Shown here: positions 10,359 through 45,622 of the stretch, piece after piece | Layout: every line of letters begins with the position of its first letter | How positions within the stretch are numbered: the first letter of the stretch is position 1 | Virus record (IMG/VR): IMGVR_UViG_3300023184_000026 | Location: 124,001-188,000 of that record | DNA length: 64,000 nt | Strand: one strand, 5' to 3' | Position numbers and translations under genes: made by a program | Notes under the pieces: model-generated | The model's input: only the letters and a program-made list of their open reading frames with translations | The model's database searches: none | Told to the model about the DNA's origin: nothing

Positions 10359-10663
10359 ACTACGACAACTTATTTATTTTTATTGTAACGCATGTAAAGC
10401 AACTCGGCGGCAATGGTCGCGGCGTTGTTATTACACGCAAAACAACATTAGAAGAAATTACTAATATATTTGATGCTTTTCTTGTTAGAGAAGAAATAGC
10501 CAAACTCATGAAGTTTACTAAAGAAACTTCACCTGAACATCCTAATATGGTTGTATATCGCACAGATGGTTCAGAAGAACATATTGTGTTTGGATTGAGT
10601 GAAGCTGGTTGGAAAGATGATTATGGATTGACTCATGATGATGTTGTTGTTAGTGTAGCATAA
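10355..10663 (+). CDS. hypothetical protein
   Basis: ATGA-coupled ORF. Confidence 0.6.
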   Translation: MNYDNLFIFIVTHVKQLGGNGRGVVITRKTTLEEITNIFDAFLVREEIAKLMKFTKETSPEHPNMVVYRTDGSEEHIVFGLSEAGWKDDYGLTHDDVVVSVA

Positions 10664-10666
10664 TAT

Positions 10667-10936
10667 ATGAAACTATTATCAATGGAAGATATTGATGCTA
10701 GGTTAGATAAAATATTACCAGAACTTCCATCAGAAAATGATGTAGAAGCATACATGAAAACATTTGGAATTGATCGTGTAGATGCTGTTCAACTGTGTCG
10801 TATTTCAACATATGATCGTAATCATGGGTTGATGAAGATATCTGATACCACAGGCAATGAGTATATGAAAACTCATGCTGAGTATCTTGAATTGAGCAAA
10901 ATGGTAGCAGAACACAACAGACAATTAAATTTATGA
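10667..10936 (+). CDS. hypothetical protein
   Basis: ORF tiles with neighbours. Confidence 0.6.
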   Translation: MKLLSMEDIDARLDKILPELPSENDVEAYMKTFGIDRVDAVQLCRISTYDRNHGLMKISDTTGNEYMKTHAEYLELSKMVAEHNRQLNL

Positions 10937-11487
10937 AATTCAAATATTATATCAAAAATGTAAAAGGACTTGTTTTTCCAGCGCGAGCAAATAAAACTGA
11001 TGCTGGTTATGATGTTATATCAACAAGTCCCGCTAATATTATAGGACAAACTTGGAACAGTAGTAGTGGTAAAACTTATTACAAGCGCATAGATTATATT
11101 GAATATGAAACCAATGTATACACCCATCCAGCCACCGAAGCAATTGATTCTTGCCAAAGTTCATATTCTATTTATAATTGTCACACAGATTTGAGACCAC
11201 GAAGTTCAATCAGTAAATATAATATTGTGCTTGCCAATTCTGTTGGTCTTATTGATCGTGGATATAGAAATCAAATATTGGTTCGCTTCAAATATATTTG
11301 GCAACCAGAAGATTATTCTATTATAGATGACCTAATTTTAGGTACACCTAATTTGAGCAAATTATACAATATGGGTGATAAGATTTGTCAACTACTACCT
11401 ATGGAAACACATGATATTGAGTTTCATCCAGTAGATATATTGGACAACAATGATCGTGGTGGTGGATTTGGATCTACAGGAAAGTGA
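10933..11487 (+). CDS. dut: trimeric dUTPase
   Basis: DAGYDV, RPRSSIS, GLIDRGYR, KICQL, RGGGFGSTG. Confidence 0.92.
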   Translation: MKFKYYIKNVKGLVFPARANKTDAGYDVISTSPANIIGQTWNSSSGKTYYKRIDYIEYETNVYTHPATEAIDSCQSSYSIYNCHTDLRPRSSISKYNIVLANSVGLIDRGYRNQILVRFKYIWQPEDYSIIDDLILGTPNLSKLYNMGDKICQLLPMETHDIEFHPVDILDNNDRGGGFGSTGK

Positions 11488-11524
11488 TCATTTTCTTTTT
11501 TTTAACATATATTTATTATGTGAT

Positions 11525-11686
11525 ATGAGTAAAAATCACGATAGATACAAAGAAGATTATTCAACAATAGACATTGAACAATTGGAAGAAATAGACACAG
11601 AGAAATTTGAGAAGTTTCGTCCAAAGAATAAAAAGAACATAAAGGGTAAATCAAAAGACAATAGTATAAAAAAAGACGACGAGTAA
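11525..11686 (+). CDS. small charged hypothetical protein
   Basis: ATG at 11525 just after a TATTTATT motif. Confidence 0.55.
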   Translation: MSKNHDRYKEDYSTIDIEQLEEIDTEKFEKFRPKNKKNIKGKSKDNSIKKDDE

Positions 11687-11701
11687 TATCGGCGTCTTTT
11701 T
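11670..11701. terminator. putative bidirectional intrinsic terminator
   Basis: AAAAAGACG..CGA/TCG..CGTCTTTTT hairpin over the stop codon of the upstream ORF. Confidence 0.55.
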
Positions 11702-11707
11702 GTTTTT

Positions 11708-11887
11708 ATGAGCACCACTGATGACAAGTGTGTCTTTTATTTGGAAATGTTCAGAGATGGACTTTATATAAAATTGTCAGAAGAACTACAAAAAGAAGAC
11801 GCCGCAACAACTGCGGCGTTTTGTTATTATTTGGCGAAGTATGAAGGCGTTCACCATTTAGATTTTTTGCGTAAGTTGATAGGTTAG
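11708..11887 (+). CDS. hypothetical protein (59 aa, below the ORF-track cutoff)
   Basis: MSTTDDKCVFYLEMFRDG...RKLIG translated by hand. Confidence 0.5.
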   Translation: MSTTDDKCVFYLEMFRDGLYIKLSEELQKEDAATTAAFCYYLAKYEGVHHLDFLRKLIG

Positions 11888-12891
11888 GATTCCATCTTTT
11901 TCTTTATTTCATCTAATACCGAGAAATCGTTGTTCAATATTTGCGTCTCCCAAATATAAAATAAGCTAAGTCCCTTTTCTTGGCAAAATTTTGCTTTATT
12001 TTTGTCTTTTTCAATCTTGGATGATTGTATTTTGTTTATAAGACGTTTTCCATCTCCATACAGTTCTGGATTTGCGTGCCAGTAATCTCCTTGTACTTCA
12101 ATCAATATTTTGTGTTTTTTATTTCCAAAATCAAACTGCTTGTGTCCAAGTATAACACCAAACTTGAATGACAGTCCTCGTTTATTTAGTTCGTTTTGTA
12201 CAATGGACTCTATTTTGTTGGGTTTCCATGTTTTCATTTGCGATACCATTGCTGCGGTTCCACCCTTTGCCTTCAACCGTCGGTATTCTTCGGGGTCGTC
12301 CCGCTGCAATCTTTTCTGCGACTCGGATATTTTGTTGGCGTATTCTTTGATATATTCTTCGGACAATGATTCTCTCCACATCTTTCTTTTTTTGCTAATC
12401 AAGTCTTGCGTTTCTTTATTGTGTGATTTTCCATGAAATGGATTTTTGTTTCCAGAAAATGCAACAGACATTTTTTTTGCTCTGACCTTTTCTCTATTAT
12501 CCGCCTCTTCTTTACCGTATTTTTCAACCCACCTTTTATAATTTGATTTTCCAAAGTTGGCATTATTTTTCCCAACTCCCCATTTTCCTTTTCTCTCCTT
12601 GCTCAATTTGTCTTTGAAGTATCGGCTGTGTTTCTTTCCCTTGAAAGGATTTTGATGGGTTCCCCGCCATCTATTTCCAAAATATTCCCTAGTAAGGTGC
12701 GCGGAAGTTATGGATTTTATTTTATAATAAGAACTATCTCCCTTACATTGTATTTTGACATCGCTACCAGCAAGATGTTCTTTCACAATCTTGCTGGTAT
12801 CATCCATAAGATAATATGATGGATTATTCTTTGATTTGCCGCGATGATATTCAATTACAACTTTATCGTTTATTTTTATTATGTTCTTCAT
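11884..12891 (-). mobile_element. free-standing homing endonuclease: NUMOD3-like repeats plus C-terminal Vsr/DUF559-like PD-(D/E)XK nuclease
   Basis: NPFKGKKHS and NPFHGKSHNKET; FDFGNKKHKILIEVQGDYWH. Confidence 0.8.
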
Positions 12892-12937: not shown

Positions 12938-13975
12938 TCAAAGTTTTTTATTATTTTTAACGTCCCACTCAACATTTTTCAAATTTCCACCGGCGTATGA
13001 AATGGAGCTTTGAAGATGTCCTATCATATGACGAAGCTTATCGGCGTAAGATATGCCGTCGCATTCCAATTCAATCAGAGTTCCTTCAATGTGGCTATCA
13101 CCCGTTTTGTTGTGAGAAGAAGCGGAGCCGTAATATTGTTTGTAAGTTTTTGTTATTATAATCGGACCGCCACCGGCATAATATTCATTGGACGAAACAT
13201 TCTTATATACTGTTTCGGCTGGAGAATCAATGCTGCGAGCAAATATGCCACCGGCCATAACCACACTTGCACCTGCAACAAGAGCCTTTGCTATGTCCCC
13301 GCACTCGGAAATTCCTCCGTCCGCAATTATTGGCCGTCTAGCAATCTTGGAACACTCCAAAATACAGCTAAACATCGGAACACCAAATCCAGTTTCATTA
13401 TAAGTCCGACACGCTTTTCCAGCCGCAATTCCAACCTTCGTGGCGTCTGCACCCCAATTCTCCAAGTCAACAACCGCACCAGCCGCCGCAACATTTCCAG
13501 CAATGATGAATGGTCGTTCATATGCTCCTCTTTTATAAACACTATGTAAAAATTCAAGCATTTCCTTCATTCTTACGCTGTGTGCGTGCGCAATATCAAT
13601 AGTTAGAAAATCTATGCGAAGATTTTTTAAGATGCAATAATGAATCAATTCCACGTCCTCTTCTTTCACACCAATACTGATACTGATATTCTTAAAATTT
13701 TCTTTGTTTGCAACTTCAATAAACTTTTTATTATCTGTGTTGGATGGTGCGGTTTTGTCTGCGTTGAAGCGATGCATGATATAAAAATATTCATTTTCAC
13801 TCATATACTTTGCTTTATCAACATTCATGGTACATTCCATGTTGGCTGGCACAACTGGTAATTTAAATGTTTGATCACCAAATTTTATAGAAGTATTTGC
13901 TTCACTACGTGAATGAAACTCGCTATAACGAGGCTTTAGAAACACATCTTGATATGAATAATAGGTTTTTGACAT
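12938..13975 (-). CDS. guaC: GMP reductase
   Basis: LPVVPANM, YFYIMHRF, IDIAHAHS, AGNV, KVGIAAGKACRT, IIADGGI, LQSSISYAGG. Confidence 0.88.
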   Translation of the reverse strand: MSKTYYSYQDVFLKPRYSEFHSRSEANTSIKFGDQTFKLPVVPANMECTMNVDKAKYMSENEYFYIMHRFNADKTAPSNTDNKKFIEVANKENFKNISISIGVKEEDVELIHYCILKNLRIDFLTIDIAHAHSVRMKEMLEFLHSVYKRGAYERPFIIAGNVAAAGAVVDLENWGADATKVGIAAGKACRTYNETGFGVPMFSCILECSKIARRPIIADGGISECGDIAKALVAGASVVMAGGIFARSIDSPAETVYKNVSSNEYYAGGGPIIITKTYKQYYGSASSHNKTGDSHIEGTLIELECDGISYADKLRHMIGHLQSSISYAGGNLKNVEWDVKNNKKL

Positions 13976-14536: not shown

Positions 14537-14701
14537 ATGGGTAGAAAATCGCACAATCTAACAAAGGAACAAAAAGATGAACGCAACAGAGAATACCGAA
14601 TGCGGAGTTATTGGAAGCGCGTTGAAAAAGAACGAGCAGCCGGACGAGAAGCCTACTATCGTAAGCGGGATATACGGACTCCGCAGCAAAACAACGGGTA
14701 A
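14537..14701 (+). CDS. 54-aa basic helical protein overlapping the GIY-YIG gene
   Basis: MGRKSHNLTKEQKDERNREY... preceded by TACTTATA and GAAAGG. Confidence 0.6.
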   Translation: MGRKSHNLTKEQKDERNREYRMRSYWKRVEKERAAGREAYYRKRDIRTPQQNNG

Positions 14702-15572
14702 ATGGTATATAGGTCAAAGTACCGATATATTTGAGCGGTGGAGGGATTACCAAATGGTTCGGTGTAAAAATCAAACAAAAATATATCACGCATTGTTGAA
14801 ATACGGTTATGATGATTTTGATAGGATAATAATAGAAGATATGCCGACAGTAAGTTGGATGATGGATTATAGAGAGATGTATTGGATACGAAAATATGAT
14901 TCTGTAAAAAATGGGTACAATATCGCAGAAGGCGGTGGTGTCGGAATTTCATTCAAAGGAAGAAAACATTCGGAGGAAACCAAGCGAAAAATGTCGGCTT
15001 GGCAGACGGGAAGGAAGCGGACGGCGGAAACGGTGGAGAGGATGCGTAAATCTTTGACTGGAAAGAAATATGGACCAAAATCAATAGAGACTAAGGAAAA
15101 AATTCGGCTTGGGAATATTGGGAGGATTGTATCCGAAGAAACGAAGAGGAAACTATCAAACCGGAATGTATCAATAGAAACGCGAATGAAAATGTCCATT
15201 TCCAATAAAGGAATGTATGATGGTGAAAAAAACCCATGCTTTGGTAGAAGATGGATAACCGACGGAATTTCCAATAAATTTGTAAAAGGAACGGCTGAAT
15301 TGCCTATTGGATGGAAATATGGAAAAATTGGTACTCCACATTCGGAAGAATCGAAGCATAAAATATCAATTGGAAATACGGGAAAAATACGGTCAGAAGA
15401 AGTCAAGCGAGATGTATCTATCCGGCAATCTGGGAAAATACGGGGACCGAACAAACATGGACATTCTAAAGAAACAAAACTGAAATTATCAATTGCTATG
15501 AGCGGCAGGCCCAAATCACAAGAAACTAGAGACAATATGAAAATTGCTTGGATAAAACGAAAGGCTGCATAA
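14577..15572 (+). mobile_element. GIY-YIG homing endonuclease with multiple NUMOD3 repeats
   Basis: SGIYGLRSKTTGKWYIGQS; REMYWI; NGYN; repeated HSEETK..MS/LS motifs. Confidence 0.88.
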
Positions 15573-16448: not shown

Positions 16449-16780
16449 ACGAGCAATATACAACAATGAATATATCAGCAATGATGACAAGAGGTCATAG
16501 TAATGACTCTGTAAGTAGTGCTGACATACAATCATTGTTGCGTGGTCGTTCATTTGGTAATCATAAACAACAAGCAGAAAAGCCATTTGAAATGAATCCA
16601 AGTATTCCAGATTATAATAATGCTGATATGCAAGAACTACAAGATTATTGCTCAAAGCGTGGCATACTTGGTGTGAATTTTAATGGTCGCGATCCAAAAT
16701 CAATTTTGAAAATGCTCAAAGCCAGAATGGGTGACAGAACATCTATCAACGAAACTAAAAAAGGATTACTAAATGGATAA
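16445..16780 (+). CDS. hypothetical protein
   Basis: ATGA-coupled ORF. Confidence 0.6.
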   Translation: MNEQYTTMNISAMMTRGHSNDSVSSADIQSLLRGRSFGNHKQQAEKPFEMNPSIPDYNNADMQELQDYCSKRGILGVNFNGRDPKSILKMLKARMGDRTSINETKKGLLNG

Positions 16781-17696
16781 AATACCAGCATACTACAGTT
16801 TTTATACAGACCTGATTGCAGAAGGTCATTGTATTATGGTTGATGTACCACAAAAAGAATCTATGCTTGAATTTATCAAGCAGATTCCAAACGAATGTGT
16901 ATATGAAGAAGTTGGCGAAAATTATGGTAAGGAAGCCAATCCACATGTAACTGTTATGTATGGCTTGAGTCCAGTAGAAGAAGGTAGAGTCAAAGAACTA
17001 TTGAATAAAGTACCAAAAAAGATTGTAGCAGAACTGGGAAAAATCAGTAAGTTTTCTAACACAGATACTCCATATGATGTATTGAAGATTGAAGTGAAAA
17101 GTCCTCATTTGAGCAAGATACATGAAATGATTCGCAAGAACTTTGACAACAACTATAAATGGCCACAATACAATCCTCATGTTACTTTGGCATATGTCAA
17201 AAAAGGAACATGTAATGAATATGTTGGTAATAAAACATTTGAAGGTATGAAAGTAATGTTTGAAACATTTATGTATAGCAACGGTATTAGAGAACTGAAT
17301 CATGCTGTGCCAATGAAGGAATATTATGTTGGTCAATCTGGTGGCTATGGTGGTGGAGCAATGGCTGGTGGAGGTGTGGCAGCAACCAATTGGGCTGGTA
17401 CATTCTCTAGCAATCAAACATCACGCCGCTTACAAAATTATCCAGCACAACGCAAATATACATATATGCAGGGCAATACTGTTATTGGTAGTCCATTATA
17501 TGATACTCTCACAGACGATGATTTGATAGATCCAAACTTTAGCAAAGATGAAATACGTACTGGACTGCGTTATGAAATGAAACGCATGGAATATCCAGAC
17601 AAAGATGTAGCCAAACCAACAGTATTGAAAAATCTTCACAAAAATCCAAAATATTATAGCGACTTGGAAATGTACTTTCAATCGGATAAAATTTAA
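16773..17696 (+). CDS. 2H phosphoesterase (2'-5' RNA ligase/Acb1-like) fused to a DUF5661-like C-terminal domain
   Basis: PHVTVMY and PHVTLAY HxT motifs; C-terminal GLRYEM..NLHKNPKYYSDL. Confidence 0.75.
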   Translation: MDKIPAYYSFYTDLIAEGHCIMVDVPQKESMLEFIKQIPNECVYEEVGENYGKEANPHVTVMYGLSPVEEGRVKELLNKVPKKIVAELGKISKFSNTDTPYDVLKIEVKSPHLSKIHEMIRKNFDNNYKWPQYNPHVTLAYVKKGTCNEYVGNKTFEGMKVMFETFMYSNGIRELNHAVPMKEYYVGQSGGYGGGAMAGGGVAATNWAGTFSSNQTSRRLQNYPAQRKYTYMQGNTVIGSPLYDTLTDDDLIDPNFSKDEIRTGLRYEMKRMEYPDKDVAKPTVLKNLHKNPKYYSDLEMYFQSDKI

Positions 17697-23534: not shown

Positions 23535-26500
23535 ATGAGAAATATATTTAGTCAATTCGATCAATCCAGCCCAGAAGGCGTTGTAAAAGCCCCACGCGGC
23601 GCAAAATTCTGTAGAAATGGTGATGATTTCTTCCTTGATGTTCGAGGAAACTTGCAGAAATTGAATATTTCAAAGAAGGCATTTGTTTATGGATCATATA
23701 TAAATGCGGGATTTACAACTCTAAAAGAAGAATATATCTCGTTTTCAAAACCAAGCGAAACATGGATCAAGCGAGGTGAGGGAAACAATAAAATAGGCTG
23801 GGTCAGCGTTGGATCATACAATTTATTTACAAGAGTTGTTGCAAATAATGTTCCTATATTATTGGAAAATATCATTGGTGCTTGGGCTGGCTATTATAGC
23901 AGTTATATACTAAACACAAGCAATGAACTATGGTCCGTTGGATATAACGATGATGGACAACTGGGAATTGGAAATACCGATTATCGTGGATCTGCAAGTT
24001 TGTCTTTGACAGATGTAAAACTCGCGGCATCAAGTTGTGAAGGATATTTTGCTGGCGCAGTAAAGAATGATAATACTCTTTGGTTCACTGGAAACGGTGC
24101 AAACGGAACATTTGGTAATGGCGGATACAGCAGTTATGATACATGGACAGAAACAGTACTTGAAGGTGATATCACAGGTTCTGGAGCAATAACAAATCTT
24201 GTAACTGGCGAAAATTACAGTGCATTGCTTATGGAAGATGATACATTGTGGGTATCAACCGATGAAATATTTGGACTATCAGCAACCACATTTACTCAAA
24301 TAACAAGCAGTATTAAATCTATTTCTGGTGGCGGCTATCACCTATTGTTTGTCAAGAATGATAATACATTGTGGGGCATTGGAAATAATTATCATTATCA
24401 ATTGGGCACTGAGGCAAGTTCTTCATTTGATTGGGACAATCCATACCAAATTGCATCAAATGTAGCATCATGCGCAGCAATGGGATATCACAGTGCATAT
24501 ATTGATACCGATGGTAAACTATTTACATTTGGTAATAACGGCAATGGACAACTTGGTACATCATATGGATATGATGACTTTGATGTGTCTGAACCACAAC
24601 TGATTGACACAGATGTAAAGTTTGTTGGTGGTGGTGACGATTTTACATACTATATAAAGAATGATGGAACATTGTATGGTATGGGCAACGACAACGATGG
24701 ACAATTGTCCAATAAATTCTATAATGATGTCATTGAACCAATATTGATTGACACAGATGTAACATACGCAGTGGGTGGAAATGAACATGGACTATATATC
24801 AAATCAGATAAAACATTATACGGAATGGGATACAACTATCAATGGCAATTGGGCAAATATGCACTTCCATTCAGTATGTATTATACAGACGCAACAGGAT
24901 GGACCACAGAAGGCACAGATGAATTTATCTTCACGGATAGTTATGGTACGGATGAAATTTACTGGCGCGATGTTATTTATGCAGATGGTAAATTCATTGC
25001 TGGTGGCGGCGAAGGAAATACTCAAATAAAATATTCTTCAAATGGTAAAAATTGGTCAAGTGGTTCTATTACAAATGTAGAAGGTGGAATTTCTGGTATT
25101 GCATATAACGGAACTAATACATATGTCGCTGTTTCAAGTGTATCAAATGGATACAACGACGGCAGACCAGAAGCATTCACATCAAGTGATGGTATTACTT
25201 GGACAACAGGTTCTTTGAACAACACAAACTATGACGAACTAAATCGAGTAAGATATGTCAACGGAAAATTCATTGCTGTTGGCGAAGACAGAATAGTAAC
25301 ATCGTCAAATGGAACAGATTGGGCAGAACAAACTGGATCATTTTCATCATACAACACAAGCGTTGCATATGGCAATGGAAAGTATGTAATATCGACTAAT
25401 GGGGGGACTTATAACAGTTACGATGAAAGAAATACATTCACACAAACATTTGATAATAACACCGCAAGTTATGTATCAGCTGGGGAGGATCATGTTTTAG
25501 TTATAAAAGATGATACATTATATGGTGTTGGCAGAAATGGCGATGGTCAACTTGGAAAAGACAGTTCGTTGGGAGAATTCATAAAGTTTGTTCCAATAGT
25601 GTCTAATGTTAGAAATGTAGCATCTGGTCGAGATCACGTAACCTTTGTAAAAAATGACAATACATTGTGGGGTATGGGAGATAATTATGAAGGACAACTT
25701 GGAGACGGAACTCGTGTCGAAAGATACTCGCCTGTTCAAATAGACACAAATGTATCACAATCATTCTGCTCATCAGAAAATGGAAGTTGTACAGCATATA
25801 TTAAGAACGACAACACCTTATGGGGTATGGGATATAACGGATATGGTCAACTAACTGGGTCTGTTATTGGTACATATGTAACAACATCAATTCAATTGGA
25901 CACAAATATTGTACAAGCGGCAATTAGCGACAATCATATATTGTATATCAAGAGCAACGGAAATTTATATGGAATTGGATATAACAACTATGGACAACTT
26001 GGAACTGGTGACACTAATGCACGTACATCATCATATCTTATAGACACAAATGTTGTATCTTGCGCTGTATCCGACTATACCTCATACTATATCAAAAATG
26101 ATAATACATTATATGGCATGGGATATAACAGCGACGGTCAACTTGGAATTGGTGCAAATTATAGCAATCAAATCACCGCAAGCATGATTACCGGAAGCGT
26201 AAAGCAAGTTTCTGCTACAAATGACAATGCATTGTTTGTTGCACTAGACGGCACATTATATGGCATGGGATATAATGGATATGGACAACTTGGAACTGGT
26301 GATTATACAAGTTATGATGTTCCAACTATATCAACCACGGATGTAAGCAAAGTATCTTGTGGAGAAGACTTCACATATATCATCAAAAATGATGGAACTG
26401 TGCTGGCTACTGGTGACAATAACTATAATGTTTTGGGTATTACAAACACAGCTGACAAAGTAATGTACTCAACTGATGCAACCACTTGGCACACAGCTTC

Positions 26501-26867
26501 AGTACCGGATTATTATTATAACGATGTTGCATTTGGAAACAACAAATTTGTTATGGTGTCGGATGATGACAGTTTTATTGTATCTTCTACAGACGCCATC
26601 AATTGGACAAGTAGTTATGTAACAACAAGTTCTTATGTATCGTTGAGTAAAGTGATATATGACGGAACCAAGTTTGTGGCAAGTAGTTATTACACAGACG
26701 ATGGATATAATATCTTTACATCCGCCGACGCTGTAAATTGGACGGCTTCAACGACTGGATATAACCAGAATTGGGGAGCACTTGCATATGGCGATGGAAA
26801 ATATGTATTGTTGTCTGGTGGATGGCAAAATGATGTAAATCCAAAAGTAAAACTGAATATCGGCTAA
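23535..26867 (+). CDS. RCC1-repeat/BNR-repeat beta-propeller protein, probable virion surface or adhesin protein
   Basis: Many LYGMGYNxxGQLG RCC1 units interrupted by SSDGITWT/IAYNG-type units; preceded by TATTTATA. Confidence 0.8.
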   Translation: MRNIFSQFDQSSPEGVVKAPRGAKFCRNGDDFFLDVRGNLQKLNISKKAFVYGSYINAGFTTLKEEYISFSKPSETWIKRGEGNNKIGWVSVGSYNLFTRVVANNVPILLENIIGAWAGYYSSYILNTSNELWSVGYNDDGQLGIGNTDYRGSASLSLTDVKLAASSCEGYFAGAVKNDNTLWFTGNGANGTFGNGGYSSYDTWTETVLEGDITGSGAITNLVTGENYSALLMEDDTLWVSTDEIFGLSATTFTQITSSIKSISGGGYHLLFVKNDNTLWGIGNNYHYQLGTEASSSFDWDNPYQIASNVASCAAMGYHSAYIDTDGKLFTFGNNGNGQLGTSYGYDDFDVSEPQLIDTDVKFVGGGDDFTYYIKNDGTLYGMGNDNDGQLSNKFYNDVIEPILIDTDVTYAVGGNEHGLYIKSDKTLYGMGYNYQWQLGKYALPFSMYYTDATGWTTEGTDEFIFTDSYGTDEIYWRDVIYADGKFIAGGGEGNTQIKYSSNGKNWSSGSITNVEGGISGIAYNGTNTYVAVSSVSNGYNDGRPEAFTSSDGITWTTGSLNNTNYDELNRVRYVNGKFIAVGEDRIVTSSNGTDWAEQTGSFSSYNTSVAYGNGKYVISTNGGTYNSYDERNTFTQTFDNNTASYVSAGEDHVLVIKDDTLYGVGRNGDGQLGKDSSLGEFIKFVPIVSNVRNVASGRDHVTFVKNDNTLWGMGDNYEGQLGDGTRVERYSPVQIDTNVSQSFCSSENGSCTAYIKNDNTLWGMGYNGYGQLTGSVIGTYVTTSIQLDTNIVQAAISDNHILYIKSNGNLYGIGYNNYGQLGTGDTNARTSSYLIDTNVVSCAVSDYTSYYIKNDNTLYGMGYNSDGQLGIGANYSNQITASMITGSVKQVSATNDNALFVALDGTLYGMGYNGYGQLGTGDYTSYDVPTISTTDVSKVSCGEDFTYIIKNDGTVLATGDNNYNVLGITNTADKVMYSTDATTWHTASVPDYYYNDVAFGNNKFVMVSDDDSFIVSSTDAINWTSSYVTTSSYVSLSKVIYDGTKFVASSYYTDDGYNIFTSADAVNWTASTTGYNQNWGALAYGDGKYVLLSGGWQNDVNPKVKLNIG

Positions 26868-39707: not shown

Positions 39708-39952
39708 AAGCACATATACCAGTTGAGCTGGGTAATCAACTACATAGTCAGATTAATAATCGGCCACTTAATCAGCTATGTGATCAGCTATATAGTCAGT
39801 TTAATATTAAGATTAATACTCAACTTAATAATCAGCTATATAATCTGTTTTATATTCAGTTGTCTGATCAACTATATAATCAGCTTGATAATCAGATATA
39901 TAGACAGCTATGTCTTCAGCTATATAATCAGCGACTTAATCAACTAAAATGA
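39704..39952 (+). CDS. xQLx tetrad-repeat protein 1
   Basis: About 18 units of the 12-nt consensus AATCAGCTATAT; leader MKAHIPVELG. Confidence 0.7.
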   Translation: MKAHIPVELGNQLHSQINNRPLNQLCDQLYSQFNIKINTQLNNQLYNLFYIQLSDQLYNQLDNQIYRQLCLQLYNQRLNQLK

Positions 39953-40173
39953 AATCATATAAAAAAGTAGATTTGGGTGTTGAAATACACACCAAACTAT
40001 ATAATCAGATTAATAATCATCTATATAATCATATATATAATCAGAAAGAAAGTCAGCTAGGTAGTCAGATAGATAATCAGCTAGTTAATCAGATACGTAA
40101 TCAGCTTGGCAATCAACTTAGTAATCAAATTGGTAATGAGCTACATAATCAACTTCGTAATCAACTAAAATGA
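39949..40173 (+). CDS. xQLx tetrad-repeat protein 2
   Basis: Same repeat; leader MKSYKKVDLG; ATGA-coupled. Confidence 0.7.
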   Translation: MKSYKKVDLGVEIHTKLYNQINNHLYNHIYNQKESQLGSQIDNQLVNQIRNQLGNQLSNQIGNELHNQLRNQLK

Positions 40174-40406
40174 AAGCACATAAACAAGTAGATTTGGGTA
40201 AACCAATTTATATTCAGCTAGTTAATCAAAAAGTAAAGTTGGGTAACACAATTTATATTCAGCTAGAAGATCAGCTAGATAATCAGCTATGTCTTCAGCT
40301 ATATAATAACCTAGCTAATCAACTATATCTTCAGCTATATAATAACCTAGCTATTCAGCTAAAAATTAAAAAGATTTATCTCGACAATCGGTATAAAAAA
40401 GTATAG
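40170..40406 (+). CDS. xQLx tetrad-repeat protein 3
   Basis: Same repeat; leader MKAHKQVDLG; ATGA-coupled. Confidence 0.7.
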   Translation: MKAHKQVDLGKPIYIQLVNQKVKLGNTIYIQLEDQLDNQLCLQLYNNLANQLYLQLYNNLAIQLKIKKIYLDNRYKKV

Positions 40407-41706: not shown

Positions 41707-41931
41707 GTGAATAAATATAAACAAGTTGAGCTGGGTAATCAGCTACATAGTCAGATTAATAATCAGCTATATAATCAGCTATATAATCAGCTTTGGAATC
41801 AGCTAGATAGACAGCTAAGTAATCAGCTATATAATCAGCTATATAATCAGCTTTGGAATCAGCTAGATAGACAGCTAAGTAATCAGCTATATAATCATGT
41901 TTATAACGAGAATAAGCTTGCCAAACTATAG
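41707..41931 (+). CDS. xQLx tetrad-repeat protein 4
   Basis: GTG start; leader MNKYKQVELG; NQLYNQLW repeats. Confidence 0.7.
   Translation: MNKYKQVELGNQLHSQINNQLYNQLYNQLWNQLDRQLSNQLYNQLYNQLWNQLDRQLSNQLYNHVYNENKLAKL
41761..41897 (+). repeat. exact 60-bp tandem duplication built from 12-nt units
   Basis: 41761-41820 identical to 41821-41880, plus a 17-nt partial third copy. Confidence 0.95.
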
Positions 41932-41954: not shown

Positions 41955-42629
41955 ATGAAAATTATTGGTATATCAGACTCCCACGGTTCTCATTGGGACA
42001 TAAAAGTTCCAGATGGAGATATTTTAGTTCATACTGGAGATTTTTCTTCACACGGAAGATTGCCAGACACACTTGATTTTTTGAGATGGTTCAACACACA
42101 TCCACACAAGCACAAGATTTTTATAGCGGGCAATCATGACTGGTTGATGGAACAAGATACAAACTTTTGGAGAATAATCAAAATGGAGTTTCCAGATTTG
42201 ACATATCTTCAAGATGAAGCTTGTGAAGTTGATGGACTTAAATTCTTTGGTTCTCCCCAAACCCCACGATTTTTTAATTGGGCATTTAATCGTGACAGAG
42301 GACAAGATATAAAGAGATATTGGGATAAAATTCCAACTGACACTGATGTACTTATTACACATGGTCCACCATATGGTATTTGTGATGAAGCATATCGTGT
42401 TGGCTTCAACACCACAGAACATGTTGGATGTAAAGATTTGCTTGATGCTACATTGCGTATTGCTCCCAAACTTCATTTGTTTGGACACATTCACTTTGCT
42501 GGCGGTCAAAGTTATGTTGCTCCAAAAACAACATATGCCAATGTTTCTTTACTCAACGAAGATTATCTTGTAGTGAACAAACCAATGATGTTTGATGTTG
42601 ACAACAATAAAATTGTGAGTATAGTATAA
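41955..42629 (+). CDS. metallophosphoesterase (MPPED/239FB-like)
   Basis: ISDSHG, HTGDF, IAGNHD, ITHGPP, HLFGHIH. Confidence 0.9.
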   Translation: MKIIGISDSHGSHWDIKVPDGDILVHTGDFSSHGRLPDTLDFLRWFNTHPHKHKIFIAGNHDWLMEQDTNFWRIIKMEFPDLTYLQDEACEVDGLKFFGSPQTPRFFNWAFNRDRGQDIKRYWDKIPTDTDVLITHGPPYGICDEAYRVGFNTTEHVGCKDLLDATLRIAPKLHLFGHIHFAGGQSYVAPKTTYANVSLLNEDYLVVNKPMMFDVDNNKIVSIV

Positions 42630-42635
42630 TCATAT

Positions 42636-42824
42636 ATGTTTATTATTTACGCAATATTGACACTATGGTCAGTTTTTGGTTTCATTTATTATATGGCAAT
42701 GATGGACGATGTAAAAGGATACAAATCAGTCATATTGTTGATTGTCGCTGGACCAATGCTTTGGTCTATATACACATTTACCGTTATATTTTCTATACTT
42801 CACAACTGGTTAACAAAAGATTAA
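42636..42824 (+). CDS. small membrane protein
   Basis: Two hydrophobic helices. Confidence 0.55.
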   Translation: MFIIYAILTLWSVFGFIYYMAMMDDVKGYKSVILLIVAGPMLWSIYTFTVIFSILHNWLTKD

Positions 42825-42830
42825 AATTTT

Positions 42831-43379
42831 ATGAGTACACTAAAAGAACTTACAGCATATTCACATGCCCAAGCCGAAAACACGCCTTTTATGCGATTGT
42901 TTATGGCAAAGGCTCTTACAGAAGAAGAGTACATGGAATATATTACTCAACTTTCTGTTATTTATACAGCACTTGAGTTTGCTGCCGAAAAGGTTGGCAT
43001 ATTACAAGAACTTGATGGCATTCAACGAGCATCAAAAGTGCGAGCAGATGTATATGAACTAAACAAGAAACTTGGCAAACAATCCAAGATTTATTGGGAA
43101 ACTATTATGTATTACAACGAGATTACTCGTATGACAGAACGAGATGAAATTCTTGCTCATTTTTATGTGCGATATGCTGGTGATATGTATGGTGGTCAGA
43201 TGCTCAAGCCGCTTGCTCATGGCAGCGGAACAATGTATGATTTTGACGACAAGTTGCCAGTTCTGCGTCAAAAGATGCGTGAGCTTGCTACACCAGAACT
43301 TGCTGATGATGCCAACATGGCTTTTAACAGAACAATTGATGTTCTAAACTGCTCCATCATACACGTCGGCACATTCTGA
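42831..43379 (+). CDS. ho1: heme oxygenase
   Basis: LKELT..SHAQAE (proximal His), IYTALE, AHFYVRYAGDMYGGQ. Confidence 0.9.
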   Translation: MSTLKELTAYSHAQAENTPFMRLFMAKALTEEEYMEYITQLSVIYTALEFAAEKVGILQELDGIQRASKVRADVYELNKKLGKQSKIYWETIMYYNEITRMTERDEILAHFYVRYAGDMYGGQMLKPLAHGSGTMYDFDDKLPVLRQKMRELATPELADDANMAFNRTIDVLNCSIIHVGTF

Positions 43380-43380
43380 T

Positions 43381-44058
43381 ATGAGTGTTATATTCGACGA
43401 AATGAAAGTGTTGTCTAGTGATTTATATCTAAAAATCGCGAAGGACAATAATGAAATAGAAAGTGATATGCTGACTGCATATAACTGGACCAATCGTATA
43501 TTTCGTGGAGCAAAATTTCGTCGTGGTCATATTGAAATATTGAATGTTGTCGAAGACAAAAAGATGTGGATTATGCATATATGTATATTTCCACATCTTG
43601 ATGACACTTCACCAATATTTGGCTTTGATGTAATTTGTGGTGCCAATAAGATCACAGGAATATTTCTTGATTTTAGTATGGCAACAAACAATCATCCCAT
43701 GAACGTATGGTTTAAAAATAGAACCAAAGATGTTGTATGGAAAAAAGATCGTGAGTTGCCAGATTGGGGCAAGCGTATATTCAGTGAAAATATGATTGCT
43801 GCTGGTGGAGTAAACACCGAATCTGAACTAAATCAAATCATTGAAGTAGCCAAAGATTGCTTGGATTATTATGTAAATAATGTGGGCAGAACCATTGTTG
43901 ATTTTAGCGTGGCAGAACGACACAACAAATATTGTATAAATCAAAAAGAAAATGTTCATACAAAACGGTTTTTGATAAACTGCGGATATAAAGAAGATGA
44001 TGTCAAAAATTTTATTGACAAACACCTGTTTCCTGAAGTAAAATACAACAATATATGA
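43381..44058 (+). CDS. ferredoxin-dependent bilin reductase (PcyA/PcyX family)
   Basis: FRRGHIE, MHICIFP, PIFGFDVI, LDFS, RELPDW..IFS, YCINQKEN.HT; 1 nt downstream of the heme oxygenase. Confidence 0.85.
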   Translation: MSVIFDEMKVLSSDLYLKIAKDNNEIESDMLTAYNWTNRIFRGAKFRRGHIEILNVVEDKKMWIMHICIFPHLDDTSPIFGFDVICGANKITGIFLDFSMATNNHPMNVWFKNRTKDVVWKKDRELPDWGKRIFSENMIAAGGVNTESELNQIIEVAKDCLDYYVNNVGRTIVDFSVAERHNKYCINQKENVHTKRFLINCGYKEDDVKNFIDKHLFPEVKYNNI

Positions 44059-44080: not shown

Positions 44081-44950
44081 TTACAATAAATGCGGACGTA
44101 TAGAGTTCCACTTATCTTTTTTACGTTTCATGTACAATGAAGTATTTCCGCCATATAACAAATCTCCAACTCTCAATAGAGAATCAATTTTCATGACAGC
44201 CAATATGTAAATAGTGTTTCTTTTATATATGTGAACACTTTTCACGCCATTCTCTTCGAGAAATCGTTTAAGAAAATTTCCCAACTTTTCTGACACTACA
44301 ACACTAAAGTTGCAACTGGCAATATTGCCAGTTTTAGAAAAAGTACAAGTTATGCAACCATCTCCTTCATATAACCCCAACAGAAAATATCTCACAAGGT
44401 CTGTTGGGACTGGCGGCATTCCAAAATTAAAATAAGTTTTTCCACAACATACGCCAAGATTTTTTAAATCATCATAGATTTTTGCACGTGATATGTCCAA
44501 TATATAAGTTCCACCAGCACGATAAGTTTTTCCGTTTAGTGGAGAAACCATGTCGTGTTCTTTAACGTATCCCAACGGACGAGTGGTTTTTAGTATTTTA
44601 TTTATATCTTGTAAATACGCCACATCATCTTCTTTCAATCTTAAACTCATGTTTTTATTATCTTTACTCATAGTGCCATCCGCAAATATCATCCCAAGAA
44701 TTTGAGCTTTCTCGGGAGTATCTATTTTTTCAAAAAAAGATTCGTCTATGTCATACTTGCTAACAAAACAATTTTTCCTCGTTAGTTTTAACCCCAACCG
44801 TTTCAGTATTTTACTAACAGTTGACGGTGCTATATTGAACCGCGTGGACAAAATATTGTTAGTTGTTTCGGGATTGTTCTTGACAAACTCCGCAATATTA
44901 GTATATACTTCGGGCTGAATTGAATTGGGTCTAAATTTAATATTATTCAT
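44081..44950 (-). mobile_element. double-motif LAGLIDADG homing endonuclease with N-terminal HTH
   Basis: LGMIFADGTM and FLLGLYEGDGCI; start reassigned to ATG at 44950. Confidence 0.85.
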
Positions 44951-45010
44951 GCATATACATATAACAAAATATGGATTTCCACGAATATTATACTTTTTAT
45001 AACAAAATAT

Positions 45011-45622
45011 ATGAATAAAACACTTGACGATCAGATTTGTAATAAGTACCCGAAGATGTTTCGGGACCGTAATAAACCCATGAATGAAACTGCCATGTGT
45101 TGGGGATTCCAGTGCAGCGACGGGTGGTTTAATATTATAGATTCTCTCTGCACGGCACTGACGTATACCTACACAACCTCGGTTAAGGTTGATGCAGAAG
45201 ACGGTAAACGACTGGGAATAGAACCCAGTGTCTATGACAAAAAAACAAACTATTATTGCGAAATAATCCAGCCTCAAGTTGTAGTTAATACCGTAAAAGA
45301 AAAATTCGGTACGCTGCGATTCTATTATCATACTGAACTGGAAGAAAAAATGTCGTACTTGAAAGGGACGGGCAAATATCCGGAACTGGATAAAATACTG
45401 GAACGTTATTACAATTATTTCGACGGCATTGTGCATATGGCTGAAACACTATCTGAACGCACCTGTGAAATTACTGGACAGAACGGTGAACTGCATGTTA
45501 GTGGAGCAAATCGGTCTGGATGGTATAAAACTCTTAATTGTGAATATGCCAAGAATGACCCATTCTGCGTTGATAGAAACTATGTTCCTGTAAGTTCATT
45601 GAATAAAAAAGAAACATCATGA
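45011..45622 (+). CDS. conserved phage hypothetical protein
   Basis: GWFNIIDSLC, VKEKFGTLRFY, CEITG motifs. Confidence 0.7.
   Translation: MNKTLDDQICNKYPKMFRDRNKPMNETAMCWGFQCSDGWFNIIDSLCTALTYTYTTSVKVDAEDGKRLGIEPSVYDKKTNYYCEIIQPQVVVNTVKEKFGTLRFYYHTELEEKMSYLKGTGKYPELDKILERYYNYFDGIVHMAETLSERTCEITGQNGELHVSGANRSGWYKTLNCEYAKNDPFCVDRNYVPVSSLNKKETS

What the first reader, a model, noticed from the sequence alone, without database searches (positions are those of the whole stretch)
42831..44058. Heme oxygenase plus bilin reductase operon in a phage with no phototroph hallmarks, with hybrid PcyA/PcyX residues
Seen: adjacent ho and FDBR genes; the reductase has H50-x-E52, I64, H66, C68 and D83. Established: HO makes biliverdin; PcyA makes phycocyanobilin, while phage PebS and PcyX make phycoerythrobilin. 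From recalled numbering, the spacing (acid to His 14, His to Asp 17) matches PcyX, but Glu52 and Ile64 match the PcyA positions (E76, I86) where PcyX has Asp and Met. Inference: a distinct FDBR clade with an unknown product, in a phage whose host may be verrucomicrobial; possible roles are iron release, redox sink or chromophore supply.
Basis: partly seen in the sequence, partly recalled or inferred. Interest (0 to 1): 0.75.

Follow-up and report, generated by a model that had tools for sequence, protein, structure and literature searches.

The report
Phage heme-to-bilin enzyme pair
A giant lake-water phage carries an intact-looking gene pair that should cut heme open and reduce the product to a bilin pigment; this is a known kind of phage cargo, but the reductase sits on an untested side branch that keeps the key residues of the phycocyanobilin enzyme PcyA, so its product is open.

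Summary
Window 42831-43379 encodes a short heme oxygenase (182 aa). One base later, 43381-44058 encodes a 225-aa ferredoxin-dependent bilin reductase with H50, E52, I64, H66, C68 and D83.

The reductase is far closer to phage PcyX (PDB 5owg, E 1e-43) than to PcyA (E 1e-9). In a tree it lies inside the phage PcyX supergroup (support 100/100). Its own clade (100/96) branches outside the Asp/Met clade that holds the characterised, phycoerythrobilin-making PcyX.

Glu52 with Ile/Val64 is the ancestral state. It is shared with cyanobacterial PcyA, with alpha-proteobacterial-type PcyA (the Falsiroseomonas clade here), and with the phage CB_2 enzyme, which was shown to make phycocyanobilin. Glu is kept in 62 of 66 phage Glu-type sequences, whereas the site drifts in the Met clade. 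One lake phage carries both types in tandem.

I predict phycocyanobilin (about 0.5) over phycoerythrobilin (about 0.3). This is inference only.

The phage is a 297-kb freshwater T4-like myovirus. It has no photosystem, phycobiliprotein, lyase, GAF, ferredoxin or flavodoxin genes. Its host is undetermined, and I found no positive evidence for Verrucomicrobia.

The pair is a new variant of a known cassette and of moderate interest.

The parts
41955..42629 (+). Calcineurin-like metallophosphoesterase gene. It is the conserved upstream neighbour of the cassette; a functional link is not shown.
   Evidence: Pfam Metallophos E 4.7e-11. The same gene precedes HO-FDBR in related contigs.
42598..42625 (+). 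Promoter-like site (TTGACA-16-TATAGT) ahead of the small ORF and the cassette. Weak evidence.
   Evidence: 11 of 12 consensus matches. The region as a whole is not clearly enriched over shuffles (24 found against 18.5 +/- 4.6).
42636..42824 (+). 62-aa hydrophobic ORF directly upstream of HO, possibly co-transcribed. Function unknown.
   Evidence: ORF; no Pfam or PHROG hit. A 64-aa ORF follows the phosphoesterase gene in two of the three relatives examined. RNA-library contig X17 spans 42624-42870.
42831..43379 (+). Short heme oxygenase (182 aa) of the phage HemO type. Predicted reaction: heme b to biliverdin IX-alpha plus Fe plus CO.
   Evidence: PF01126 63.1 bits. Best PDB match is Synechocystis HO-1, E 9e-10, with proximal His12 and the distal G117-D118-x-x-G121-G122 aligned. 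These residues are 99-100% conserved in 83 distinct phage HOs of 160-240 aa (the full set of hits clusters at 168-197 aa). A 177-aa phage homologue (CB_2 vHemO) was shown to be active (PMC11480375).
43381..44058 (+). Ferredoxin-dependent bilin reductase (225 aa). It belongs to the Glu52/Ile64-retaining early branch of the phage PcyX supergroup (AX clade). It is predicted to reduce biliverdin; the product is untested.
   Evidence: PF05996 60.1 bits. PcyX 5owg E 9.5e-44 against PcyA 7.9e-10. AF2 model pLDDT 95.5. Fold matches: PcyA TM 0.81, PcyX TM 0.82. Trees. H66 and D83 are invariant.
44081..44950 (-). LAGLIDADG homing-endonuclease gene with an HTH (ORF open to 45436). It is a strain-specific insertion right after the FDBR stop and is not part of the cassette.
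   Evidence: Pfam LAGLIDADG_3/LAGLIDADG_1/HTH_24. It is absent from relatives L075, L103 and L076 and from the contigs. Contigs in runs X15 and X17 diverge exactly at 44058.

Best explanation
This is a two-gene auxiliary metabolic cassette of a freshwater jumbo T4-like phage, probably translationally coupled. Step 1 (inferred from family, catalytic residues and an assayed homologue): the short heme oxygenase opens host heme b to biliverdin IX-alpha, releasing iron and CO. Step 2 (inferred likewise): the bilin reductase takes electrons from a host ferredoxin or flavodoxin, since the phage encodes neither, and reduces biliverdin to a phycobilin. The reductase is a member of the phage PcyX supergroup within the AX clade. 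It belongs to an early-branching lineage that still has the PcyA-type Glu-His-Asp triad plus Ile (E52, H66, D83, I64). It does not have the Asp/Met pair of the characterised phycoerythrobilin-making PcyX. My working prediction is that it carries out PcyA-type chemistry, that is D-ring vinyl reduction followed by A-ring reduction, giving phycocyanobilin. I put this at about 0.5, against about 0.3 for phycoerythrobilin and about 0.2 for a two-electron or other product. The physiological role in an apparently non-phototrophic infection is not shown. The most economical reading is heme turnover for iron release, with the reductase pulling the reaction by removing biliverdin. Supply of a chromophore to a host bilin-binding protein is the alternative.
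For: Identity and integrity: Pfam hits are well over their cut-offs. The PDB sequence hits are PcyX, then PcyA, and HO-1. The model is confident and has the FDBR fold. Catalytic residues are conserved across 83 phage HOs, and H66/D83 are invariant across FDBRs.

Inheritance: the order phosphoesterase-HO-FDBR is conserved in related phage contigs at 54-74% (FDBR) and 57-74% (HO) identity. HO lies directly upstream on the same strand in 87 of 141 FDBR loci.

Placement: the supergroup has 100/100 support, the query clade 100/96 as its first branch, and the Met clade is derived. The quick tree of 164 rows gives the same picture.

Glu as a constrained residue: Glu is present in 84/85 outgroup sequences, 18/18 in E group 1 and 44/48 in the query's group. 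In the Met clade the site reads D81, S11, N8, K5, Q2. All five mutationally studied PcyA sites (H74, E76, I86, H88, D105) are kept in the query.

Precedent: the phage CB_2 FDBR has Glu and Val at these sites (supplement read) and makes PCB. The authors attribute this to the absence of PcyX's Asp55 (PMC11480375). Among enzymes of the PcyA/PcyX lineage, every PCB maker cited in the papers read here has the Glu (PMC13446030 Table 2).

Non-redundancy: lake phage L083 carries HO, then an Asp/Met FDBR, then a Glu/Ile FDBR in tandem. Both are intact, and the arrangement recurs in more than 20 lake metagenomes.

Dependence on the host for electrons: no Fer2, Fer4 or flavodoxin gene.

In situ signal: contigs from four lake metatranscriptome libraries cover HO and FDBR.
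Against: No assay exists for any member of the query's clade. The closest characterised enzyme by sequence is PcyX, a PEB maker (41% to the Mosig enzyme, which matches 5owg at E 2e-138). From my memory of the abstract of Ledermann et al. 2018 (FEBS J; not held in the library), changing PcyX Asp55 back to Glu did not turn it into a PcyA, so Glu alone does not set the product. FDBR regiospecificity is said to be poorly predictable from sequence or phylogeny (PMC13193486). The query is PcyX-like at several clade-discriminating columns (63, 65, 105, 141, 208). It differs from both enzymes at the PcyA V225 and D220 positions (F197, V192). Four members of its wider clade have Gln at 52. The L083 Glu-type paralogue is in E group 1, not in the query's clade. 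RNA-library contigs do not prove transcription, because DNA carry-over is possible and no silent control region was available. No benefit to the phage has been shown.
Confidence: 0.6

Rival explanations
1. It is simply another PcyX. Despite Glu52/Ile64, the enzyme reduces biliverdin via 15,16-dihydrobiliverdin to phycoerythrobilin. On this reading the change of product happened on the long stem of the phage supergroup, before the Glu-to-Asp change.
For: The best solved relative is PcyX by 34 orders of magnitude in E-value. The query lies inside the 100/100 supergroup, whose stem is long (0.78 changes per column). It is PcyX-like at five discriminating columns. From my memory of Ledermann 2018, Asp55 is not catalytic in PcyX and D55E does not change the product.
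Against: Glu is strongly conserved in the Glu-type phage clades, while the same site drifts in the Met clade. The tandem Asp/Met and Glu/Ile paralogues in L083 would be redundant. The only assayed Glu-type phage enzyme makes PCB.
Confidence: 0.3
2. It is an ordinary cyanophage pigment module. The host would be a freshwater cyanobacterium such as Microcystis, and the pair would keep phycobilisomes supplied with bilin during infection, as proposed for cyanophage HO/PcyA/PebS.
For: The nearest cultured relative is Microcystis phage Mel-JY01: 62 of 346 ORFs are shared, with MCP 58.6%, TerL 52% and PolB 42.5% identity. The phage comes from lake water. PCB is the main cyanobacterial chromophore (established knowledge).
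Against: There are no psbA/psbD, phycobiliprotein, CpeT lyase or ferredoxin genes. Mel-JY01 itself gave no FDBR match. The phage is about as close to Flavobacterium phage immuto (MCP 55%, TerL 51%). It shows no Shine-Dalgarno enrichment (8% against 7% background), whereas Mel-JY01 shows 31% against 7%. The FDBR is not in the cyanobacterial/cyanophage PcyA clade. In the literature PcyX-type genes are reported from non-cyanophages (PMC13193486).
Confidence: 0.12
3. The product identity is irrelevant and the cassette is an iron-release or heme-disposal device. HO frees iron from host heme for phage needs, and the reductase only removes biliverdin, which would otherwise slow HO turnover. No bilin acceptor exists.
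For: The phage has no bilin-binding protein or lyase. The cassette is widespread in phages of heterotrophs, with at least 594 hits in IMG/VR, the SAR11 phage Mosig and mis-binned contigs in MAGs of many phyla. In Mosig it sits beside four 2OG-Fe(II) oxygenase genes and a ferrochelatase gene. Iron supply is the role discussed in the literature (PMC11480375).
Against: If any reduction would do, strong conservation of the regiospecificity-linked Glu and retention of two different FDBR types in one phage are unexpected. Host genomes could not be searched for acceptors because the host is unknown. This rival concerns the physiological role and is compatible with the enzymology of the best explanation.
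Confidence: 0.4
4. The genes are decaying or non-functional passengers.
For: A homing endonuclease is inserted right next to the FDBR. One low-depth RNA-library contig skips 599 nt inside the FDBR. An FDBR-like pseudogene exists in a Spirosomataceae genome.
Against: Both reading frames are intact, with all catalytic residues. They are conserved in sequence and order across relatives diverged to 54-74% identity. The structural model is very confident.
Confidence: 0.03

Closest known systems
PcyX (phycoerythrobilin synthase; PDB 5owg PcyX_EBK42635; near-identical enzyme in Pelagibacter phage Mosig EXVC030M)
   Same: Same phage supergroup of the AX clade (100/100). Same length and residue spacing, same His/Asp catalytic pair, and the same gene order with a short HO directly upstream. 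Same fold.
   Different: PcyX has Asp55 and Met67 where this enzyme has Glu52 and Ile64. It lies in the derived Met clade, whereas the query clade branches outside it. Identity is only 41%. The characterised examples are marine (PMC11480375), while this one is from lakes. The product here is untested.
vPcyA of freshwater phage CB_2 (Crystal Bog; PMC11480375)
   Same: It is from a freshwater jumbo phage of a presumed non-cyanobacterial host that also encodes a short, assayed HemO. It has Glu at the E76 position and Val/Ile at the I86 position. It was shown to make phycocyanobilin.
   Different: By its motifs, CB_2's enzyme resembles the P0053 group, which branches outside the PcyX supergroup. 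I did not put CB_2 itself in the tree. Its cassette is 'broken' and comes with alaS, whereas this genome has no AlaS-type gene.
Alpha-proteobacterial PcyA of the AX clade (Bradyrhizobium sp. ORS278 BRADO1265; Falsiroseomonas homologues here)
   Same: Glu-His-Asp triad (PMC13446030 Table 2). It belongs to the same AX lineage and occurs in non-cyanobacterial organisms.
   Different: It is a separate clade (99/96) at 26-30% identity to the query. It is a chromosomal gene linked to a phytochrome in Bradyrhizobium (PMC11480375), whereas no photoreceptor gene is present here.
Cyanobacterial and cyanophage PcyA (PDB 2d1e; phages S-SSM4, ACG-2014j)
   Same: H74, E76, I86, H88 and D105 are all matched (H50, E52, I64, H66, D83). 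Fold TM is 0.81.
   Different: Only 24-27% identity, and it serves as the outgroup in the trees. There is a two-residue shorter spacing between Glu and His. V225 and D220 are not matched (F197, V192). pcyA is not next to HO in any of 31 cyanobacterial loci.
PebS (cyanophage phycoerythrobilin synthase)
   Same: It is a phage-borne four-electron FDBR that sits next to a phage HO gene.
   Different: It belongs to a different FDBR lineage (PebA/PebS/PUBS; PMC13446030). The structural match is much weaker (TM 0.60, E 1e-5), and there was no sequence hit at E 1 or better.

Membership tests
Ferredoxin-dependent bilin reductase family (Pfam PF05996) | Significant match to the family profile and the FDBR alpha/beta/alpha fold | tested here: met
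   60.1 bits against a cut-off of 31. AF2 pLDDT 95.5. Foldseek top hits are PcyA, PcyX, PebB, PebA and HY2.
PcyA/PcyX 'AX clade' and phage PcyX supergroup | Phylogenetic placement with phage PcyX rather than with cyanobacterial PcyA | tested here: met
   The supergroup of 46 rows has 100/100 support and includes the query and the Mosig/PcyX proxy. In the 164-row tree its support is 96.
PcyX sensu stricto (phycoerythrobilin synthase) | Asp at the position of PcyA Glu76 (Asp55 of PcyX) | tested here: not met
   The query has Glu52 aligned to Asp55. All 29 Asp/Met-signature representatives of the Met clade have Asp there, and the query clade has E14/Q2.
PcyX sensu stricto (phycoerythrobilin synthase) | Placement inside the clade that holds the characterised enzymes | tested here: not met
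   The query clade (100/96) branches outside the Met clade that holds the Mosig enzyme, the stand-in for crystallised PcyX 5owg. The branch separating them has only moderate support (81/68 and 87/83).
PcyX sensu stricto (phycoerythrobilin synthase) | Product is phycoerythrobilin via 15,16-dihydrobiliverdin | not testable with these tools
   Needs an enzyme assay.
PcyA (phycocyanobilin:ferredoxin oxidoreductase), functional class | Catalytic triad Glu76-His88-Asp105 (with Ile86 and His74) | tested here: met
   E52, H66, D83, I64 and H50 align to these residues. The triad definition is from PMC13446030.
PcyA (phycocyanobilin:ferredoxin oxidoreductase), functional class | Product is phycocyanobilin via 18(1),18(2)-dihydrobiliverdin | not testable with these tools
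   Needs an enzyme assay. The prediction is indirect.
Canonical heme oxygenase (Pfam PF01126, HO-1 type) | Proximal histidine and distal-helix G-D-x-x-G-G motif | tested here: met
   His12 and G117-D118-M-Y-G121-G122 align with Synechocystis and human HO-1. They are 99-100% conserved in 83 phage HOs.
Canonical heme oxygenase (Pfam PF01126, HO-1 type) | Full-length fold (about 215-240 aa) | tested here: not met
   The protein is 182 aa, and the profile is matched only over positions 6-141 of 204. This short form is the norm in phage cassettes (168-197 aa), and a 177-aa homologue is active (PMC11480375).
Cyanophage photosynthesis and pigment AMG set | Co-occurrence with psbA/psbD, phycobilisome-related genes, bilin lyases or ferredoxin | tested here: not met
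   No hits in the complete 297-kb genome.
Three-gene alaS-hemO-FDBR cassette (PMC11480375) | A 5-aminolevulinate synthase gene in the genome | tested here: not met
   No Aminotran_1_2 match at E 0.01 or better.

The most novel reading that the evidence does not exclude
The Glu/Ile-type phage reductases (the query clade and E group 1) would be a functionally distinct enzyme class. Their product would differ from that of PcyX: phycocyanobilin or a further bilin. That product would be delivered to a bilin-binding protein of a heterotrophic freshwater host (a BBAG-type globin, a phytochrome or an unknown acceptor). The phage would then reprogram a light- or redox-sensing pathway rather than merely recycle iron. 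The tandem Asp/Met plus Glu/Ile phage would make two different bilins.
Probability: 0.15. Interest if true: 0.75.

Novelty: new variant of a known kind. Interest (0 to 1): 0.45.

Why it matters
Heme oxygenase plus PcyX-like cassettes in phages of non-phototrophs are abundant, with at least 594 hits in IMG/VR, yet their purpose is still called enigmatic in the literature. Only Asp/Met PcyX enzymes and one distant Glu-type enzyme (CB_2) have been assayed.

This clade is a natural intermediate. It has the PcyX backbone with the PcyA triad intact. Assaying it, together with the two paralogues of the tandem phage, would show on which branch the switch from phycocyanobilin to phycoerythrobilin happened and which residues beyond Asp55 cause it. 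That question was left open by single-residue mutagenesis.

The finding also shows that both enzyme types are common in lakes and not only in the ocean. It does not overturn anything. If the product turns out to be phycoerythrobilin, this is just one more PcyX.

Tried and rejected
1. Near-identical DNA search of 16 kb against cultured phages found no match. A single-protein scan of IMG/VR found nothing until an alignment was used.

2. The FEBS J 2018 PcyX structure paper is not held, so its mutagenesis result is cited from memory only.

3. Test of co-evolution of positions 52 and 64 by independent pairs: there were only 4-5 independent contrasts, so no test is possible. The Glu+Ile/Val against Asp+Met association is explained by one or a few ancestral changes.

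4. Host inference:
- The tmRNA is the standard one-piece type, which is uninformative.
- The language-model atlas on the DegT aminotransferase gave mostly viral clusters.
- Absence of Shine-Dalgarno motifs matches a Flavobacterium phage and differs from the Microcystis phage. However, two Verrucomicrobiota MAG contigs were also SD-poor in my crude measure, with small samples. This therefore neither supports nor excludes Verrucomicrobia.

5. FDBR hits in bacterial MAGs (Verrucomicrobiales, Polynucleobacter, Pirellulales and others) were considered as host evidence and rejected. The two 'Verrucomicrobiales' contigs checked (L016, L021) carry tail-fibre and neck genes, and that MAG has three rpoB copies. 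The one Coraliomargarita contig checked gave no structural hit.

6. I did not place the CB_2 sequence in the tree, because it is only available as supplementary text and should not be retyped. Its position is judged from motifs.

7. Complex prediction for HO with FDBR was not run, because I make no claim that they bind.

It was redone without that row.
Full report
**What is in the sequence.**
The window is bases 124001-188000 of a 297,258-bp IMG/VR virus record that CheckV rates complete. At the stated coordinates there are two + strand ORFs: 42831-43379 (182 aa) and 43381-44058 (225 aa). They are separated by a single base between the TGA and the ATG, which suggests coupled translation.

The first ORF matches Pfam Heme_oxygenase (63.1 bits, cut-off 23). 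The second matches Fe_bilin_red (60.1 bits, cut-off 31).

- Glu52 aligns with Asp55 of PcyX and Glu76 of PcyA.
- Ile64 aligns with Met67 and Ile86.
- His66 aligns with His69 and His88.
- Asp83 aligns with Asp86 and Asp105.

**The two proteins look functional.**
The oxygenase aligns with Synechocystis and human HO-1 over its first 130-150 residues. It keeps the proximal histidine (His12) and the distal G-D-x-x-G-G motif. It is short, but that is the rule in this cassette. Heme oxygenases next to phage FDBRs cluster at 168-197 aa. His12, Gly117, Asp118, Gly121 and Gly122 are 99-100% conserved among 83 distinct ones. A 177-aa homologue from phage CB_2 was purified and shown to make biliverdin IX-alpha (PMC11480375).

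The reductase gives an AlphaFold model with mean pLDDT 95.5. Its best structural matches are PcyA (TM 0.81) and PcyX (TM 0.82 by target). His66 and Asp83 are invariant in alignments of 32 and 68 relatives.

**Where the reductase belongs.**
By sequence it is much nearer to PcyX (5owg, E 9.5e-44) than to PcyA (E 7.9e-10). The only cultured phage with a close homologue is Pelagibacter phage Mosig (41% identity, HO directly upstream). The Mosig enzyme is nearly identical to the crystallised PcyX (E 1.8e-138), so I used it as the PcyX marker.

The family is large:
- 53 clusters at 90% identity in a word-indexed search, 37 of them at 56-97% identity to the query.
- 231 clusters at 50% identity with E 0.001 or better.
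- At least 594 hits in IMG/VR.

I built trees from 264 distinct full-length sequences. One was a quick IQ-TREE (LG+C20 PMSF) of 164 representatives. The other was a careful one of 84. Both were rooted on cyanobacterial PcyA and they agree:
- A mostly viral 'PcyX supergroup' is strongly supported (96 and 100/100).
- The query's clade (100/96) is its first branch.
- One or two further Glu-type viral clades follow.
- A large clade with Met at position 64 and Asp (or Ser, Asn, Lys, Gln) at position 52 is derived (88; 87/83) and holds Mosig/PcyX.

Everything outside the supergroup has Glu with Ile or Val. This includes a clade with Falsiroseomonas (alpha-proteobacterial-type PcyA), several uncultured clades and cyanobacterial PcyA. 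So the 'hybrid' is better described as a PcyX-lineage enzyme that retains the ancestral PcyA-state residues. It is a distinct clade but not a new FDBR lineage.

**What product?**
This cannot be settled in silico, and the field itself says regiospecificity is poorly predictable (PMC13193486).

Evidence pointing to PcyA-type chemistry (phycocyanobilin):
1. All five PcyA residues probed by mutagenesis and crystallography (H74, E76, I86, H88, D105) are matched. Glu76 is the residue needed for D-ring vinyl reduction (PMC13446030).
2. Glu is under constraint where it occurs: 84/85 in outgroups, 18/18 in E group 1 and 44/48 in the query's group. In the Met clade the same site drifts (D81, S11, N8, K5, Q2). 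That fits the report that Asp55 is not catalytic in PcyX.
3. The one assayed Glu-type phage enzyme, from freshwater phage CB_2, makes phycocyanobilin. Its authors attribute this to the absence of Asp55. I read its sequence in the supplement and it has Glu and Val at these sites.
4. Lake phage contig L083 carries ketoacyl synthase, HO, an Asp/Met FDBR and a Glu/Ile FDBR in a row. Both FDBRs are intact, and the arrangement is found in more than 20 lake metagenomes. Two copies with the same product would be odd.

Evidence against:
- The nearest assayed relative makes phycoerythrobilin.
- By my memory of the 2018 FEBS J abstract (paper not held), the Asp-to-Glu back-mutation did not convert PcyX.
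- The query is PcyX-like at columns 63, 65, 105, 141 and 208. It is unlike both enzymes at the V225 and D220 positions.
- The L083 Glu-type copy is in a different Glu clade.

I put phycocyanobilin at about 0.5, phycoerythrobilin at about 0.3 and something else at about 0.2.

**The phage and its host.**
The genome is a T4-like myovirus with tail sheath, T4-type DNA polymerase, rIIA, tape measure and fibres. It has 37 tRNA genes and a tmRNA. The DNA recurs in many lake-water metagenomes from 2017-2025.

The nearest cultured relatives are about equally distant:
- Microcystis phage Mel-JY01: 62 of 346 ORFs shared, with MCP 58.6%, TerL 52% and PolB 42.5% identity.
- Flavobacterium phage immuto: MCP 55%, TerL 51%.

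The whole genome lacks psbA/psbD, phycobiliproteins or BBAG globins, CpeT lyase, GAF domains, AlaS-type aminotransferase, 2Fe-2S and 4Fe-4S ferredoxins and flavodoxin. The enzymes must therefore draw electrons from the host, and any bilin acceptor must be host-encoded.

Upstream of its genes there is no Shine-Dalgarno enrichment at all (8% against 7% background). That resembles the Flavobacterium phage (6.5%) and differs from Mel-JY01 (31%) and the Mosig piece (60%). This leans towards an SD-poor host such as Bacteroidota. However, two Verrucomicrobiota contigs were also SD-poor in my crude measure.

The FDBR hits inside 'Verrucomicrobiales' MAGs are phage contigs with tail and neck genes, and they come from a contaminated bin. 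I therefore found no positive evidence for a verrucomicrobial host, and the host stays open.

**Context and expression.**
The order metallophosphoesterase, small ORF(s), HO, FDBR is conserved in relatives whose FDBR is 54-74% identical. The cassette is therefore inherited within this phage lineage.

A LAGLIDADG homing-endonuclease gene lies on the opposite strand immediately after the FDBR stop. It is absent from those relatives. Contigs in two runs diverge exactly at 44058.

Contigs from four independent lake metatranscriptome libraries cover HO and FDBR. This is consistent with expression but is not proof.

**Comparison with what is known, and verdict.**
HO plus PcyX cassettes in phages of non-cyanobacteria have been described since 2016. 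The SAR11 phage Mosig carries one, and freshwater examples, including a PCB-making enzyme, were published in 2024 (PMC11480375). [quoted passage not shown]

What is new here is modest but concrete:
- There is a sizeable, uncharacterised, Glu/Ile-retaining early branch of the phage PcyX supergroup, carried by freshwater jumbo phages.
- There is evidence from site-specific conservation and from a tandem pair that Glu-type and Asp/Met-type enzymes are not equivalent.

I rate it a new variant of a known kind, with interest about 0.45. The decisive experiment is a standard recombinant assay.

Noticed in passing
window 44081-45436 (- strand): A LAGLIDADG/HTH homing-endonuclease gene is inserted immediately after the FDBR stop. 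It is absent from related phages, and metagenome/metatranscriptome contigs diverge exactly at 44058.
   Followed up: partly
L083:7574-10669 (IMGVR_UViG_3300043438_000976): A lake phage carries beta-ketoacyl synthase, HO, an Asp/Met-type FDBR and a Glu/Ile-type FDBR in tandem. The stretch recurs in more than 20 lake metagenomes.
   Followed up: partly
window 39949-40173, 40170-40406, 41707-41931: A family of roughly 75-aa ORFs is made almost entirely of 'NQLxNQL' repeats. Several small ORFs of similar size stand at the same place in relatives.
   Followed up: no
window 43405-44005: Two 105-nt contigs in RNA library X17 (depth 2-3) join 43405 to 44005, skipping 599 nt inside the FDBR. This could be a deletion variant or an assembly artefact.
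   Followed up: no
whole genome G000 (294-346 ORFs): There is no Shine-Dalgarno enrichment upstream of genes (8% against 7% background). Upstream regions are A/T-rich and G-poor. This resembles a Flavobacterium phage and differs from Microcystis phage Mel-JY01.
   Followed up: partly
G000 85.8-100.3 kb and 196-198 kb (L007, L008, L010): There are 37 tRNA genes, mostly in one array, plus a standard one-piece tmRNA (Rfam RF00023, 94 bits) with an unusually long predicted tag peptide.
   Followed up: partly
window 16773-17693: A 307-aa protein matches the anti-CBASS Acb1 / 2H phosphoesterase families (E 1.6e-9). It is a candidate counter-defence gene.
   Followed up: no
window 23535-26864; G000 9655-11976: Large proteins (1110 and 774 aa) contain many RCC1-like repeats (PHROG 'regulator of chromosome condensation', E 3e-88).
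   Followed up: no
L074:5700-6500 (Spirosomataceae bacterium RE-19, OZ248446.1): An FDBR-like reading frame is interrupted by stop codons, in a stretch with few long ORFs. It is a decayed FDBR remnant in a Bacteroidota genome.
   Followed up: partly
L016, L021 (MAG 'Verrucomicrobiales bacterium CPC23'): Both FDBR-bearing contigs of this MAG are phage DNA (tail fibre, head-tail adaptor, head closure genes), and the MAG has three rpoB loci. It is a mixed bin.
   Followed up: yes
window 11884-12888 (-), 14577-15569 (+): Further homing-endonuclease-type genes (NUMOD3; GIY-YIG plus NUMOD3) flank a GMP-reductase/IMPDH-like gene on the minus strand (12938-13972).
   Followed up: no
L001:1491-5346 (Pelagibacter phage Mosig): In Mosig the HO-PcyX pair lies directly downstream of four 2OG-Fe(II) oxygenase genes and a ferrochelatase gene. 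This iron/heme-centred neighbourhood is not seen in this phage.
   Followed up: no
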